DNA of 63,529 nucleotides, the filler included, from Octopus bimaculoides (taxonomy: Eukaryota), in the NCBI RefSeq assembly GCF_001194135.2. It is 6 parts of 5 records of this genome, joined end to end, with 100 filler letters (N's around TTAATTAATTAA, not from the genome) between each part and the next. Parts side by side here need not be neighbours in the genome. Positions count along the whole stretch, not along the records: positions 1 to 23,525 come from NC_068981.1; 5 more parts are not named here. The stretch is one strand, 5' to 3'. Positions 9,020-19,779 of the stretch are shown here, one piece after another. The notes beneath the pieces are model-generated. The model was given only the letters and a program-made list of their open reading frames with translations, ran no database searches and was not told where the DNA came from. The number at the start of each line of letters is the position of its first letter. Position 1 is the first letter of the stretch. The position numbers were made by a program, and so were the translations under genes.

Positions 9020-11486
9020 AAAAAGCAAAAAAATAAAATCACGTACAGTTTTCAAGATGAGAAAATTTTTTTGGTTTTAGCTCATGCATTATATAGAAAT
9101 TCCAATTAATGATGTGTATGCATGTATTTCATTTACATCAGGAAAACATACCTGTTATATGGACTGTTAGATATGTAATTCGTCTGACGTTCCGTGTGTC
9201 ATGTGGTTCGTCTGAGTTCATTGTTTCATTGTTGTTGTCTTGTGGGACTGTCGTGGTAAAATGTCATTGAGATATATATGGCGGACATGACTTTTGTTTA
9301 TTCATAACGAACATTGGGTGAGTGCGTTCTTTGTATGTAATTGAACAATAAATGTAATAATTAAATTGTATAACTCGTTGTGTTATCTCTGCGAGTCACC
9401 CGAGGGAAACATAACAATACCTTTAAAATAAACTACACTATTCATTGGTGCATAGTTCAGATGCAGTATTCCATCTTCTTAAATTAACCAATCAAGTTTT
9501 GTCTGATGAAATAGATATTTCAACATCTTAAATTGTCCAGGCATAATTGGTCTGACGAAATATTTCATCTCAAATTCAATATAAATATAACCGTTTGTAT
9601 CTATTTCCTTACTTGTTTTACAGTGTTAGAAATCGTCCTGATGTGTTTTATTATGTCTGTGTACAATAACACCAGATATCAAGAAGTTTTATAAGCTATA
9701 CTTTGATTGTACTCCTGGAGAACAGGACAAGTTATAGGTACCACATTTTATCTGCTCAGCTTGCTCAAATGACTGACGTGACTGGTTCAATAAGAAGTCC
9801 ATGCCATTTGCCATTCCAATGATATGGAGGGAGCAGAAAGACCATTTTTTTTTATGACTGTTAGTTTTGCAAAATAAATGTCACAGGATTTTCTATGAAG
9901 AATAAACACAAAATTGTTTATCCCAATTTGGATTCTGCAATGAGACCTGTGACTCACAATAGGAGTCTGCCAGATGATGGTATGGAAACATCAGATGATG
10001 ATGTTGACTGTCATGATAGTGCTGCTGAGGAAGATTACGTGGCTGATGACAATAGCTTTGAACCTCAGAAATTTTCCCAAGCTGAACTGAATGACCTTGT
10101 CAGAGACCTATCCAGAACTGTTGGCATCAAGACTGAAGGAGTAGTATCTATTAGAGCACGGTATTCGTATAACTTATTTTCGACAGAGAAATGTGGTTCT
10201 ACAAACATGTTTTTCTGTTGAAGGCCCACTTTGCTTTTGCAGTAGCAACGATGGACTCTTCAAATGTTTATCACGAAATCATGATTTTGCAGAGTGGCGT
10301 TTGTTCATTGACTCTTCAAAATGAAGTTTATAAGCTGTACATCTCCATAATGATAATTTAAAGCCCTCCTTTCTGATTGGACACTCCGTTCATCTTCATG
10401 AATCATATGAGAATATGGAACTTTTGCTTCATGCCATTGCCTATTTACTCATAGAAAATGTGTGGAAATTTAAAAGTCACTGGAATGTTAATAGGAATGC
10501 AATCAGGTTTCACAAAATACTGTTGTTTCTTGTGTCTATGGGATAGTCGGGCAACTGGCAGACATTATTCGGAATCATACTGGAAGACAAGAACATCATA
10601 CCATCCAGGATTGTCTAGCGTCAAGAATACAACTCTTGTAGACCCATGTAATGTCATATTGCCTCCTTTGCACATAAAGCTTGGACTGATGAAACACTTT
10701 GGAAAGACACGAGGGAAGAGAAATGCCAGAGGGTTTGAGTATATTGTAGAAATGTTTCCCAAAATCACACAGACGAAGTTGAAAGAAGGTATCTTTGTCG
10801 GACCCCAAATTAGAGAAGTACTCAAAAATGTCAACTTCAAGACAACACTGGATTCAATTGGATCTGTGGGAATTTCTTGGGCAACAAGAAGGCAATGGAC
10901 TACAAGGATGGCATCAGGAGTCTTCTGAGATGTTACTCAGCAATGGGTTGTCGCATGTCACTGAAAGTTCACTTCTTGGACTCCCAACTGGATTTCTTCG
11001 CAGATAACCTTGGCGCAGTGTCTGATGTACATGGTGAAAGATTTCGCTAAGACATTAGTGCTATGGAGAAACGGTACCAAGGCTTTTGGAATGACAGTAT
11101 GCTGGCTGACTACTGCTGGACACTTTACCGTGTTCAACCAGATCAGGAACACCGCAGGAAATCCAAATCACGATGTTTCTAACTCTGTTGTTCTAACGTT
11201 GTCTGTTTTGTCTGTCCCATTGTTTTGTGTATTCACTCTTTGTAGAATGATAGTGATGATTTTTAACTCAATAAACTCATTTATTTCTAAAAATAATATG
11301 TCCTTATTTATTACGTTAATGATTTCATATATACAAATATGTAAATATTTGCATGTATCTACTGAAAAATTGATACGTGCTACATACATATGGAGTGAAA
11401 TTTTGAAATCAGTATTGAAAATTAGTCTAAAAAAAGTTGGTTTACATTCATAATGAGTATAATACATTTAATTTTGTTGACCAGTG
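9020..11486 (+). mobile_element. Chapaev(3)-like DNA transposon (CMC group) with decayed transposase; right TIR intact, left TIR not found
   Basis: Motifs CRNRPDVF, VPHFICSAC, MPFAIPMIWREQKDH, GFTKYCCFLCLWDSRA, ILPPLHIKLGLMK, EGIFVGPQIR and MSLKVHFL. The right end reads TTTTGTTGACCAGTG (CAC terminus) followed by TAA. Confidence 0.72.
9153..9416 (+). mobile_element. Solo LTR (264 bp) nested in the Chapaev-like element
   Basis: Inverted termini TGTTAT...ATAACA, a perfect 5-bp TSD ATACC (9148-9152 and 9417-9421), and an internal AATAAA. Confidence 0.85.
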
Positions 11487-16482: not shown

Positions 16483-17339
16483 TACACACCCGTCTTCGTC
16501 TTTTGTTTTTTTTTTGTAAATTCTCACTATATATATCTGTTAGGCACGCAGTGACCGCCAACACAATGTTATAGTCGAGTCTTACTGCGTGTCCTGACAA
16601 TATATGCCTAGCTTGCCTACAAAAGTGTAAGGGGGCCGTTGAGATTTGCGCGGTGATCGAGGAAGGGGAGAACACAGTTGTGTAAGCGACAAATATGGAG
16701 TGGCAGTGGGAGAGTAACATTAATATACAGTTGTCATTCAGAGATACACACGTGCGCGCTTTCAATTTCTTTCTGTCTCGCTCACGCCTCTTTCTCTGTC
16801 TCTCGCTCACTTTCTCTCACTCTCTTTCTGTTTGTCTATTTGTCTGTTTGTCTGTTTCTCTCTGTGTCTGTCTGTCTGTCTCTCTCCCTGTAACACACGC
16901 ACATACACACACTCACGAATCTATAGACAAGTATTTGACAAAGTTTAAACCGAAATTATCCGGAAATAACCGAAGTATTCCTTTTTTCGATTTATGAACA
17001 GACGATAAAGAAGTTATCGTCGGCTAAATACTTAGAGTTAAATCACTTTTCTTTTCACGAAAACGACGTTTCAAGTCAACATTGAAGGTGAAGTACCTTA
17101 TTAATTTCGTTTTAATTATTTACAAAATTATAATCACTCATTCATCTATCTCAAAGTTAGAAAGATATATTTCTAAAGGAGAAATTGCTATCAGTCAGTA
17201 TCTTATCCCTTTTGGTCCTGTAATTTTCCCACGTTCTGTTCTCAAAACCATCTAAAGTTTAAAGTGAAGGTGAAGTTCTTTACTGAATTTATTGAAAAAT
17301 ATTCAACAATTACATTAATTTATTAATTCCCCCCTTTAA

Positions 17340-17890
17340 TAAGGACATCAGTGGTGGTAACTATGTTCAGAGCTGTGTCACTCTAGCTCAAAAACAGCAG
17401 AAATTACTGAACTCTTCGGGAAGAGTCCGTACGATACATATACAATAATTGAAAGTATTTTCATTCTTTTATTCTGAAGTGTACAATGCAGGAATACCAA
17501 GCATACATCAGTAGAAATGGAACATATGGCGGTAATGTTGAATTAGCTGCCATTAATGAATTGTACAATGTTGCAATTCAGGTTCATCACAAAAATGAAG
17601 ATGAAATTATTTTTCCTCTGTTCACCGTTTGCGGTCGAACATTTACAGAAAGGAAGATTTTAGTGTTATATAGTGGCGAATTTGACAACGACCACTATGA
17701 TGCTCTCTTTCCCATAAACAATCTGAAAAAAATTTTCCCCTGGGCTCTACGTGCAAACCATGTGAAAAGTGTGGTGTTAGGAAGAGGAATAAAGAATCAT
17801 TAGGTATGTGTTCTTCTAAAGGTGAAGTCCATTTACCAATATTTGAGCCTCCAGAACATATAAAACATCTTCTTTTGGGTACCACTTCAG
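17340..17890 (+). pseudogene. Helitron RepHel N-terminal remnant: OTU deubiquitinase domain followed by the CxxC...C zinc-finger-like motif
   Basis: Decayed G(D)GN(C)xFRAVS, then YGGNVELAAINELYNVAIQV and HYDAL (OTU). After a frameshift in the A-run the frame reads PCEKCGVRKRNKESLGMCSSKGEVHLPIFEPPEHIKHLLLGTTSES, matching the Helitron CxxCxAxKxxxExxGMCCxxGKVxLP...PPE motif. Three stops lie in the OTU N-half. Confidence 0.75.
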
Positions 17891-17991
17891 AATCAATATG
17901 TGTGTGCGTGTGCATGTCTGTGTGTGTGCGTGCGTGCGTGTTCACGCGCGCGCATGCATGTGTGTTTACTTCTCCATTTTCTATGTTTTAG

Positions 17992-19231
17992 ATACCAGAT
18001 ATTACAATTTCCCTTGTGTATTGCATATGCAATTTCTATCCACAAATCACAGGGAATAAGCGTCGATGGTGTCATTCTTGATTTGGGGACCGGTGTTTTC
18101 TCCGACAGTATGGCTTATGTGGCCTTGTCCAGAGCTCGCAAACTGCGCACTGTTCACTTAATTGATCTTGATCCATCGAGTTTGATCATGTGCGATTCCA
18201 GCGCTTGGAAAGAATACAACTATTTGAGAGAGCACATTAATATGGAGCCACTTCCATTGTGTAACGTGAGGCTTAAAATTATTAAACTGGCTAAAAAGGC
18301 GACTAAGAAGAGTAAAGTTGCCTTTAATATGGACAGTGAAATCATCAGCTTGCCGAAATCGAAAAAGGCTAGAATTGAGAACACGGTTGCAAAGCCGTAC
18401 ATCTCGCTAGTGCGTTTTTTTTTTGTGAACAGCACGATACAGGTTATCCGCCAGCTGCCTTTGTTGGCCAAATACATGCAGTCCAGAAATGATATTGTCA
18501 TTCGTGAAATTCACGATATTACATCTTCATCTGGAACTAAATCGGTAGCCAACTCGAGAAATATTATCGGCAGCAGGTTTAACAATGGTACACAGCAGTG
18601 TGCGCATGATTTTTGGAAGCACATTTATCATTTTCTGCTTGAAAATGTTAAACAAACGTTCATGTTTGAGAATGCATTGCTCAGGTGCACCAGAAAACAC
18701 GAGGCCAAATGCCCCAAATTACAAAATAATGAGTGTGATTGTGCATCGACCAACGGCTGTGACACTTCCACGAATACGACCGATCTCAAGTCTGATCTGA
18801 CGCTGAATCTTATTAGTGTTCGGCAACAGTTTAAGAGCTTGCTCAAAAATGAGGCTTCGATTATCAGGAGGTGCAGTCTGTGTGGCATTGACACCGAGCA
18901 CACCGGTATAGTGAGCTACATGTTCCCAAGCACTATGCGTTACCTGGTTGTTTATTTGAACAGATTAAAATATATAGACAATCAGATGGTCAGGATTAAT
19001 TCGGAGTTGATAAATTATTCTCCAAATAAGCAGAACATTTACGACCAGAGATTTCGATTAATCAGCTCAGTGTTGCACACGTTGGCTAGTGCGGACTCCG
19101 GCCACTACACCAGCATCGTTCGCAACCAGGACAAATGGGACATCATTTGACGATGCCGTCTTTTCCAAGCAGTATATAGCTTTCGCGTCTAAACTGCTTA
19201 ACAACTACTTGTTCTTGGAAAAATTGAATTG
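17992..19231 (+). pseudogene. PIF1-like (Helitron) helicase C-terminus fused in frame to a USP/UCH (peptidase C19) domain
   Basis: Helicase motifs QFPLCIAYAISIHKSQG and MAYVALSRAR. USP motifs FVNSTIQ (Cys box with Cys replaced by Phe), QQCAHDF (QQD box), CSLC, RLISSVLH...SGHYTSIVR...W and, after a frameshift near 19147, FDDAV...YLFLEK*. Preceded by a polypyrimidine tract and TAG acceptor at 17990-17991. Confidence 0.8.
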
Positions 19232-19779
19232 AAATGAAATTAATATAAAGCAACAAGCATTATTTGATAAAGGACTTGCTTGACGATCAGACAGGAAATG
19301 ATATATATATATATGAGAGATATAACTTTTATATGACATATATATATATATGAGAGATATAACTTTTTATCTCTATATAGCGCTTTATTTGAATAGCTTA
19401 AGCGCATTTTTGAATTTATTAGGATAATATGAATCTGGTCCCGCCATTGAGCTATATTATCTCAGTGGTGAATGACTGCCATTTTTTGACTTTTGGGAGG
19501 TTGTGGATCGGGTTCGCAGCTTTTATGGCGACTTTTGTTATAATATTGGAAAGTTATGTCACTCGACCAGATTCTTGTAACCATTTTATCTCTCCGTATG
19601 ATAATAAACAAATACGACAATTATTTTCGATTTTATCGTACATTTTTTTAAATATTGTGACAGTCACACAATTTCAATTGGTCGGCGTTCGGGTGTCAGT
19701 TTATTAGAGGCTGCCACATCATTAGGAAAAATGCGGTACATATACAAAATATCACAAGCGTTGCTTTAAAAAGTACGAA

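What the first reader, a model, noticed from the sequence alone, without database searches (positions are those of the whole stretch)
17340..19231. Helitron whose RepHel is bracketed by two unrelated deubiquitinases (OTU upstream, USP/C19 fused to the helicase)
Seen in sequence: one strand carries, in order, an OTU domain, the Helitron N-terminal Cys motif, a break (Rep and most of the helicase are missing), the PIF1-like helicase C-terminus, and an in-frame USP domain with QQxA and His boxes. Established: some animal Helitrons/Helentrons carry an OTU cysteine protease, and Helentrons usually end in an AP endonuclease. Inference: a rolling-circle transposon with a USP in that C-terminal position plus an OTU could strip ubiquitin from its own transposase or from stalled-fork and repair factors. 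I know of no formal description of this two-DUB architecture, but novelty is unverified.
Basis: partly seen in the sequence, partly recalled or inferred. Interest (0 to 1): 0.82.

Follow-up and report, generated by a model that had tools for sequence, protein, structure and literature searches.

The report
Two dead Helitron fragments side by side
The sequence features are real, but they most likely come from two unrelated, decayed rolling-circle transposon fragments lying next to each other in the octopus genome, and the helicase-deubiquitinase fusion carried by one of them belongs to an already catalogued transposon lineage.

Summary
The window is Octopus bimaculoides chromosome DNA. These are an OTU pseudogene (17270-17722), a Helitron N-terminal Cys motif (17746-17895), a GT-rich microsatellite at the break (17898-17975), a PIF1-type helicase C-terminus (17990-18280) and an in-frame USP/UCH domain (18386-19231; Pfam 39.7 bits, E 5.6e-10).

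The helicase-USP fusion is a family trait. The window aligns to its last residue with about two dozen Hel-USP proteins. Seven full-length relatives all read DUF6570-Rep-PIF1-UCH, which is the HLE2 architecture. None has an OTU or the window's Cys motif.

That Cys motif instead matches canonical Helitron (HLE1) N-termini: Helraiser, and P0192, whose contig carries STPRs-Rep-PIF1 without DUF6570 or UCH. The two halves also differ in decay. The OTU half has 6-7 disabling lesions in 208 codons, against 1 in 414 for the Hel-USP half. CpG o/e is 0.52 against 0.93.

The best reading is therefore an old OTU-bearing HLE1 5' fragment next to a younger 5'-truncated USP-bearing HLE2 fragment, not one two-DUB element. 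UCH in HLE2 was catalogued by HELIANO (2024), and two-DUB Helitrons (VTD+OTU) were described in 2022. Interest is low.

The parts
17270..17722 (+). OTU cysteine-protease pseudogene. The Cys-box region at 17335-17383 is split by two frameshifts. The His motif DNDHYD lies in 17684-17722. There are four in-frame stop codons.
   Evidence: It is 66-70% aa identical to O. bimaculoides OTU protein P0036. P0036 scores 40.4 bits on Pfam OTU; the window copy scores 17.1 bits. Lesions were counted.
17746..17895 (+). N-terminal Cys motif of a canonical (HLE1-type) Helitron RepHel: CxxC, 17 residues, C(C>S)SKGEVHLP, 4 residues, PExIKHLL. It is in a different frame from the OTU.
   Evidence: BLASTP against Helraiser 7LCC residues 139-248 gives E 7e-4. 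tblastn with P0192 gives E 0.002, the best hit in the window. Shuffle z-scores are 8.2 (P0192), 6.9 (P0195) and 5.2 (Helraiser), against -0.8 to 2.1 for HLE2 N-termini. The per-comparison HMM E-value is 3-5e-4 for the HLE1 model against 0.11 for DUF6570.
17898..17975 (.). GT-rich (GTGTGC/TGTG)n microsatellite at the junction between the two fragments.
   Evidence: TRF rows 17898-17941; sequence; GC 0.505.
17990..18280 (+). PIF1-type helicase C-terminus (motif region AISIHKSQG...MAYVALSRARK) plus the HLE2-specific C-terminal extension. This is the 5'-truncation point of the HLE2 fragment.
   Evidence: UvrD_C_2 28.2 bits. It is 46-61% identical to USP-bearing HLE2 proteins (E 1e-21 to 1e-28) and 40% identical to the HLE1 helicase of L008 (E 7e-9).
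18281..18385 (+). Lys-rich linker between the helicase and the USP domain.
   Evidence: Alignment A1.
18386..19231 (+). USP (peptidase C19 / Pfam UCH) domain, in frame with the helicase. The Cys box is at 18413-18433 with Cys replaced by Phe. The QQ box is at 18587-18613 and the His box at 19097-19120. A +1 T insertion lies near 19145. The C-terminus is LFLEKLN, ending at 19229.
   Evidence: Pfam UCH 39.7 bits, E 5.6e-10. It is collinear to the last residue with P0002-P0006. The family profile matches USP12 in the PDB at E 1e-13. Coordinates come and the catalytic-box comparison.
19301..19379 (.). AT-rich 37-bp x2.2 tandem and palindromic repeat about 70 nt after the USP stop. It may be a 3' subterminal structure of the HLE2 fragment, but this is unverified.
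   Evidence: No other copy was available to test it.

Best explanation
The locus holds two unrelated, dead fragments of Helitron-like elements. They lie on the same strand and are joined at a GT-rich microsatellite.

(a) The first is an older 5' piece of an OTU-carrying canonical Helitron (HLE1). It consists of an OTU pseudogene followed by the HLE1-type RepHel N-terminal Cys motif, and it is cut off at about 17895.

(b) The second is a younger, 5'-truncated 3' piece of a USP-carrying HLE2 element: the helicase C-terminus fused in frame to a USP domain, 17990-19231.

In intact members of lineage (b), the transposase is one polypeptide, N-extension-DUF6570-HUH Rep-PIF1 helicase-USP. Most members keep the Cys, QQ and His boxes.

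By inference, the USP acts as a transposon-borne deubiquitinase. It would protect the transposase, or host replication and repair factors needed for rolling-circle transposition, from ubiquitin-dependent degradation or signalling. The same role has been proposed for the VTD and OTU domains of Helentrons.

The octopus copy cannot do this. It has no Rep, it lacks most of the helicase, its USP nucleophile is Phe, and its 3' end is frameshifted.
For: Shown:
- The Hel-USP part is collinear to its last residue with independent Hel-USP proteins. About two dozen distinct Hel-USP proteins were found.
- Seven full-length relatives all have DUF6570+Helitron_like_N+PIF1+UCH: P0098/L006, L001, L002, L007, L018, L011 and L043. 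Four of them are single uninterrupted ORFs of 2188-2618 aa.
- None of the seven has an OTU or the CCxKGxV motif.
- HELIANO gives DUF6570 and UCH as HLE2 markers and STPRs as an HLE1 marker.
- The window's Cys motif matches HLE1 N-termini: Helraiser 7LCC at E 7e-4 and P0192 at E 0.002. Shuffle z-scores are 5-8, against no more than 2.1 for HLE2 N-termini. The HMM E-value is 3-5e-4 for the HLE1 model against 0.11 for DUF6570.
- The CxxC-to-KG spacing (17 residues) fits HLE1 and does not fit DUF6570, where the gap is about 75 residues.
- P0192's contig L008 reads STPRs, then the motif, then Helitron_like_N (194 bits), then PIF1 (202 bits). It has no DUF6570 and no UCH.
- The window's helicase piece is closer to HLE2 than to HLE1 helicases.
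- Decay differs between the halves. There are 4 stops and 2-3 frameshifts in 208 codons, against 1 frameshift in 414 codons (binomial p 0.003-0.012). GC is 0.34-0.39 against 0.42. CpG o/e is 0.52 against 0.93.

Inferred: the deubiquitinating role in transposition. It rests on conserved catalytic boxes in most family members and on the analogy to Helitron VTDs, which are biochemically active DUBs.
Against: - No second octopus copy of either fragment with its flanks could be obtained, so the join was never seen to be absent elsewhere.
- The Cys-motif match is short (about 50 aa). It is significant only per comparison, not database-wide (E 1.2 among 2332 fragments).
- All seven full-length USP-bearing relatives are only about 25-30% identical to the octopus USP. 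They come from unidentified, mostly non-animal-looking contigs, so an octopus-specific N-terminus cannot be excluded.
- Two Helitron fragments in the same orientation, in N-to-C order and only about 100 nt apart is a coincidence that a single element would explain more simply.
- No downstream continuation of the HLE1 element was found.
- DUF6570 contains a KGxVxhLPLP core faintly like the HLE1 motif.
Confidence: 0.7

Rival explanations
1. A single Helitron family encodes OTU - RepHel - USP. This copy lost Rep and most of the helicase by an internal deletion, and the deletion site is now occupied by a microsatellite.
For: The pieces share a strand, stand in the correct N-to-C order, and are separated by only about 100 nt. 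Helitrons with two DUB classes (VTD+OTU) exist. OTU occurs upstream of RepHel in both HLE1 and HLE2.
Against: The N-terminal motif is HLE1-type, whereas the Hel-USP part is HLE2-type. Seven of seven full-length USP-bearing elements have DUF6570 and lack both the OTU and the motif. Lesion density and CpG depletion are unequal between the halves.
Confidence: 0.17
2. This is a chimeric, non-autonomous Helitron, or a recombinant. It would have picked up a fragment of another Helitron by read-through or template switching, and the OTU/N-terminal piece and the Hel-USP piece would now be mobilised together as passengers.
For: Helitrons are known for capturing fragments in a common orientation. The two pieces have different origins but share a strand.
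Against: No termini, hairpin or second copy could be identified. The different decay of the two halves argues against one recent common insertion.
Confidence: 0.1
3. The 416-codon open frame (17900-19150) is a domesticated host gene derived from the Hel-USP fragment.
For: The open frame is unusually long for a region of about 40% GC. A gene caller predicted it as P0001.
Against: The catalytic Cys is lost, the helicase is reduced to its last motifs, the C-terminus is frameshifted, and no orthologue or close paralogue was found in 5.8 billion proteins.
Confidence: 0.03

Closest known systems
USP/UCH-carrying HLE2 (Helitron2/Helentron-group) elements, HELIANO subgroups c and d (Li et al., NAR 2024, PMC11417382)
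   Same: A PIF1-type helicase is followed by a Pfam UCH domain. Full-length relatives carry the HLE2 marker DUF6570.
   Different: HELIANO states that UCH lies in a separate ORF and reports it mostly from lungfish and axolotl. Here it is fused in frame to the helicase in at least four uninterrupted ORFs. The window adds a decayed cephalopod copy that lacks Rep and DUF6570 and has a dead USP.
Helraiser / canonical Helitrons (HLE1), PDB 7LCC
   Same: The N-terminal CxxC...CCSKGKV...P..L..L motif is shared; the window has CSSKGEV.
   Different: The window keeps only about 50 aa of it, preceded by an OTU. The Rep and helicase of this element are missing.
Helentrons with VTD and OTU deubiquitinases (Erven et al. 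2022, PMC9741609)
   Same: These are rolling-circle transposons carrying DUB domains, sometimes of two classes in one element. The proposed role is protection of transposition proteins from degradation.
   Different: Those DUBs are N-terminal VTD and OTU domains in elements that end in an AP endonuclease. Here the DUB is a C-terminal USP, no AP endonuclease was detected in any relative, and the OTU appears to belong to another element.
Cellular USP12/USP46-type ubiquitin-specific proteases
   Same: They are the best solved-structure sequence match of the Helitron-USP profile (USP12, E 1e-13, spanning the Cys-to-His boxes).
   Different: Similarity is low. The Helitron USPs form their own group, fused to a transposase, and no WD40-cofactor dependence is known for them.

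Membership tests
USP-carrying HLE2 Helitron-like elements | PIF1-type helicase C-terminus collinear with that of other members | tested here: met
   46-61% identity, E 1e-21 to 1e-28; alignment A1.
USP-carrying HLE2 Helitron-like elements | UCH/USP domain downstream of, and in frame with, the helicase | tested here: met
   Pfam UCH 39.7 bits against a cut-off of 23.9. Collinear to the last residue.
USP-carrying HLE2 Helitron-like elements | DUF6570 N-terminal domain (HLE2 marker) and HUH Rep domain | tested here: not met
   Neither is found anywhere in the window. The fragment is 5'-truncated, so their absence says the copy is incomplete, not that it is unrelated.
USP-carrying HLE2 Helitron-like elements | HLE2 termini (asymmetric terminal inverted repeats, subterminal hairpins, T|T insertion) | not testable with these tools
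   No other copy of the octopus family was available. Only a candidate palindromic repeat at 19301-19379 was seen.
Canonical Helitron (HLE1) | N-terminal CxxC...CCxKGKVxLP...PxxLxxLL motif upstream of Rep | tested here: met
   The spacing and flanking residues fit HLE1 and do not fit DUF6570.
Canonical Helitron (HLE1) | HLE1-type Rep and helicase following the motif | tested here: not met
   No HLE1 Rep or helicase remnant was found in the window. The only helicase piece is HLE2-like.
Canonical Helitron (HLE1) | 5'-TC ... hairpin ... CTRR-3' ends, A|T insertion | not tested
   Boundaries cannot be set without other copies.
OTU cysteine protease (PF02338) | Profile match with catalytic Cys and His motifs | tested here: inconclusive
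   The window copy scores 17.1 bits, below the 23.3 cut-off. It is 66-70% identical to P0036, which scores 40.4 bits. The Cys box is split by frameshifts, and the HYD His motif is present.
USP / peptidase C19 (PF00443) | Catalytic Cys box, QQ box, His box | tested here: not met
   The QQ and His boxes are present, but the nucleophile Cys is Phe (RFFFVNS, 18413-18433). It is a homologous domain but a dead enzyme in this copy. Most relatives keep the Cys.
Helentron sensu stricto | C-terminal AP endonuclease (Exo_endo_phos) after the helicase | tested here: not met
   A USP occupies that position. No Exo_endo_phos hit was found in the window or in any full-length relative.

The most novel reading that the evidence does not exclude
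Octopods carry a genuine hybrid Helitron family whose single transposase combines an N-terminal OTU and an HLE1-like N-terminus with an HLE2-type helicase fused to a USP. That would be two different deubiquitinase classes bracketing RepHel, and the window would be an internally deleted copy of it.
Probability: 0.15. Interest if true: 0.5.

Novelty: new member of a known kind. Interest (0 to 1): 0.2.

Why it matters
This locus matters little. It is a non-functional relic, and the striking two-DUB layout is most likely a juxtaposition.

The family behind its right half has modest interest. The work shows that a whole HLE2 lineage encodes one polypeptide, DUF6570-Rep-PIF1-USP. Most members have intact catalytic boxes, and the lineage is spread over diverse eukaryotic contigs and now a cephalopod.

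Together with VTD and OTU, USP is a third deubiquitinase class recruited by rolling-circle transposons. This strengthens the idea that these elements repeatedly need deubiquitination. The USP domains have not been tested biochemically in any paper found here.

The fusion in one frame refines HELIANO's statement that UCH lies in a separate ORF.

Tried and rejected
- A PDB search with the 61-aa motif alone returned only a chance zinc-finger hit. Helraiser was reached only with a longer HLE1-like query.
- The HLE1 motif HMM searched against 2332 six-frame fragments ranked the window motif first. The E-value was 1.2, which is not significant database-wide. At 11,000 fragments it fell below E 0.01.
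- The contig of the octopus OTU protein P0036 is not on record, so no second copy with flanks was obtained.
- The tail of P0036 against the window motif gave no significant alignment (p 0.58), so the OTU-motif junction could not be confirmed in a second copy.
- A search for the HLE1 continuation (N-terminal region, Rep, helicase) downstream of 19231 found nothing.
- A search for HLE2 Rep or DUF6570 remnants in the window found nothing.
- The homologue search with OTU plus motif returned only P0036. The A3 profile returned only short HLE1 fragments.
- The HELIANO supplements are not held, so OTU/UCH co-occurrence in their Figure 8B could not be read.
- The Paramecium Helitron paper does not mention DUBs.
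- Inverted repeat 17099-17117 / 19227-19245 (19 nt, 89%) was considered as a possible terminal repeat. It was rejected as untestable and AT-rich.
- Other window ORFs gave no Pfam hits.

Full report
**Origin and observation**

The Hel-USP open reading frame of the window (P0001) is recorded once, on Octopus bimaculoides chromosome CM046601.1 of GCA_001194135.2. The region is AT-rich and full of microsatellites and assembly gaps.

The + strand carries these features in order:
- **OTU remnant, 17270-17722.** It reads in one frame apart from two compensating frameshifts at the catalytic-Cys box, and it has four nonsense codons. It is 66-70% identical to the O. bimaculoides OTU protein A0A0L8FT09 (P0036): (E 5e-59). 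P0036 passes Pfam OTU at 40.4 bits. The window copy alone scores 17.1 bits, below the cut-off.
- **Cys motif, 17746-17895,** in another frame.
- **GT-rich microsatellite, 17898-17975**.
- **Helicase C-terminus, 17990-18280** (UvrD_C_2 28.2 bits).
- **Lys-rich linker.**
- **USP domain, 18386-19231.** Pfam UCH scores 39.7 bits against a cut-off of 23.9, E 5.6e-10.

The OTU starts about 70 nt earlier than stated. The USP nucleophile Cys is Phe, inside a poly-T run. A +1 T insertion near 19145 breaks the last 28 codons; once it is removed the frame reads KWDIIDDAVF...LFLEKLN-stop.

**The helicase-USP fusion is a family trait**

The window piece aligns without rearrangement, down to the terminal LEKL(N), with five independent proteins that combine a Pif1 2B/C-terminal region with UCH.

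A profile of the USP part, searched against 1.84 billion representatives, gave 341 hits at E<=1e-10. BLASTP showed about two dozen of the best hits aligning over both the helicase end and the USP.

Seven full-length units were recovered:
- P0098/L006 (2245 aa, one ORF), L018 (2188 aa), L011 (2569 aa) and L043 (2618 aa) are uninterrupted.
- L001, L002 and L007 are split by short introns or insertions. One example is the Walker A motif GVAG|TGKS in L002.
- All seven read N-extension - DUF6570 - Helitron_like_N - PIF1 - UCH.
- None has an AP endonuclease.

Most members keep the Cys box, the QQ box and the GH[YF] box. The profile's best solved-structure match is USP12 (E 1e-13).

**Comparison with the literature**

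HELIANO (PMC11417382) lists UCH among 20 domains stably included in Helitron-like elements. It describes UCH as almost exclusive to HLE2 and enriched in subgroups c and d. It gives DUF6570 as an HLE2 marker and STPRs as an HLE1 marker, and it finds OTU upstream of RepHel in both groups.

Erven et al. (PMC9741609) showed that Helentron VTD domains are active deubiquitinases. They found that 121 VTD Helitrons also carry an OTU, and they proposed that Helitrons benefit from deubiquitination supplied by different DUB classes.

A Helitron-borne USP and two-DUB Helitrons are therefore both on record. One detail differs from HELIANO's text: here UCH shares the RepHel reading frame.

**Do the OTU half and the USP half belong together?**

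None of the seven full-length USP-bearing units contains an OTU or the window's Cys motif. This was checked by Pfam, regex, tblastn and HMM.

A query written from my memory of HLE1 N-termini matched Helraiser (PDB 7LCC, residues 139-248) at E 1.3e-24. That retrieved a real HLE1 sequence...RCCSKGKV...YPAYLKRLM....

The window motif compares as follows:
- It aligns to the Helraiser stretch at E 7e-4.
- A profile of the two sequences retrieved 24 real HLE1 N-terminal fragments from arthropods, a nematode and bats.
- The best tblastn hit of these fragments anywhere in the window is P0192 on 17764-17976 (E 0.002). P0195 and P0205 hit the same place.
- Shuffle tests give z = 8.2 (P0192), 6.9 (P0195), 5.2 (Helraiser) and 5.1 (P0205). 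The four HLE2 N-termini tested give -0.8 to 2.1.
- Per-comparison HMM E-values are 3-5e-4 for the HLE1 models against 0.11 for a DUF6570 model.
- The spacing between CxxC and KG (17 residues) fits HLE1. In DUF6570 the corresponding gap is about 75 residues.

P0192 lies on contig L008, which reads STPRs - motif - Helitron_like_N (194 bits) - PIF1 (202 bits). Its helicase ends without a USP, and there is no DUF6570. That is an HLE1 element.

Conversely, the window's helicase piece is 46-61% identical to HLE2-USP helicases and only 40% identical to the L008 helicase.

The two halves have also decayed unequally:

| Measure | OTU + motif half | Hel-USP half |
|---|---|---|
| Codons | 208 | 414 |
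| Disabling lesions | 4 stops + 2-3 frameshifts | 1 frameshift |
| GC | 0.34-0.39 | 0.42 |
| CpG o/e | 0.52 | 0.93 |

The binomial p for the lesion split is 0.003-0.012.

**Conclusion and limits**

The best-supported reading (about 0.7) is two fragments. One is an old OTU-bearing HLE1 5' end. The other is a younger, 5'-truncated, USP-bearing HLE2 3' end. They abut at a microsatellite.

The main weaknesses are these:
- The Cys motif is short and significant only per comparison.
- The full-length USP-bearing relatives are distant (25-30% identity) and of unknown host.
- No other octopus copy could be fetched.
- No continuation of the HLE1 element lies downstream.
- Same-strand, correctly ordered adjacency is a coincidence that a single element would explain more simply.

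A single hybrid element (about 0.17) or a chimeric non-autonomous Helitron (about 0.1) therefore remains possible. A genome-wide search of the octopus assemblies with each half separately would settle it.

**Mechanism**

Shown: intact members encode one DUF6570-Rep-PIF1-USP polypeptide with conserved USP catalytic boxes.

Inferred: by analogy with Helitron VTDs, the USP removes ubiquitin from the transposase or from host replication and repair proteins during rolling-circle transposition. The sequence affinity to USP12-type enzymes is only a weak hint.

The octopus copy is inert.

**Verdict**

This is an ordinary pair of transposon relics. The helicase-USP fusion is real but catalogued, and the two-DUB architecture is not supported. 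Interest is 0.2.

Noticed in passing
L001:1590-2591 and L001:4611-11950: A second USP-like ORF (family HMM E 3e-53) lies about 2 kb upstream of a complete DUF6570-Rep-Hel-USP unit on the same strand. This suggests head-to-tail tandem copies of the element on that metagenomic contig.
   Followed up: partly
L006:76-6813, L018:870-7433, L011:679-8385, L043:3-7856: Four uninterrupted ORFs of 2188-2618 aa carry DUF6570, Rep, PIF1 and UCH in one frame. The HELIANO paper states that UCH lies in a different ORF from RepHel.
   Followed up: yes
DUF6570 regions of P0098, L001, L002, L007, L011, L018, L043 (alignment); window 17806-17838: DUF6570 contains a conserved 'KGxVxhLPLP' core that faintly resembles the HLE1 'CCxKGKVxLP' motif. 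The N-terminal regions of HLE1 and HLE2 transposases may be remotely homologous.
   Followed up: no
window 9895-11453 (+): Three consecutive ORFs (108, 156 and 147 aa; e.g. ...KYCCFLCLWDSRA...LPPLHIKLGLMKHF...) look like pieces of one decayed gene, probably another transposable-element protein. They have no Pfam hit.
   Followed up: partly
window 19301-19379: An AT-rich 37-bp unit is repeated 2.2 times and forms palindromes, about 70 nt after the USP stop. A short GC-stem hairpin candidate follows at about 19380-19405. These may be Helitron 3' subterminal structures or just a microsatellite.
   Followed up: no
window 17085-17111 and 17267-17293: A 15-26 nt direct repeat (AAGGTGAAGT...) lies 182 nt apart. 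One copy sits at the very start of the OTU homology, so this may be a small duplication at the 5' edge of the OTU fragment.
   Followed up: no
L002:4100-4800: The helicase of this AT-rich (32% GC) USP-bearing element is interrupted by several introns of about 50-60 nt, for example inside the Walker A motif (GVAG|TGKS). The host is therefore a eukaryote with short introns; its identity is unknown.
   Followed up: partly
P0040, P0053, P0072, P0105, P0148 (one search hits): Several long proteins consist of 3-10 tandem UCH domains and have no transposon domains. They are cellular USP arrays unrelated to the Helitron lineage, and they rank high with the Helitron-USP profile.
   Followed up: partly
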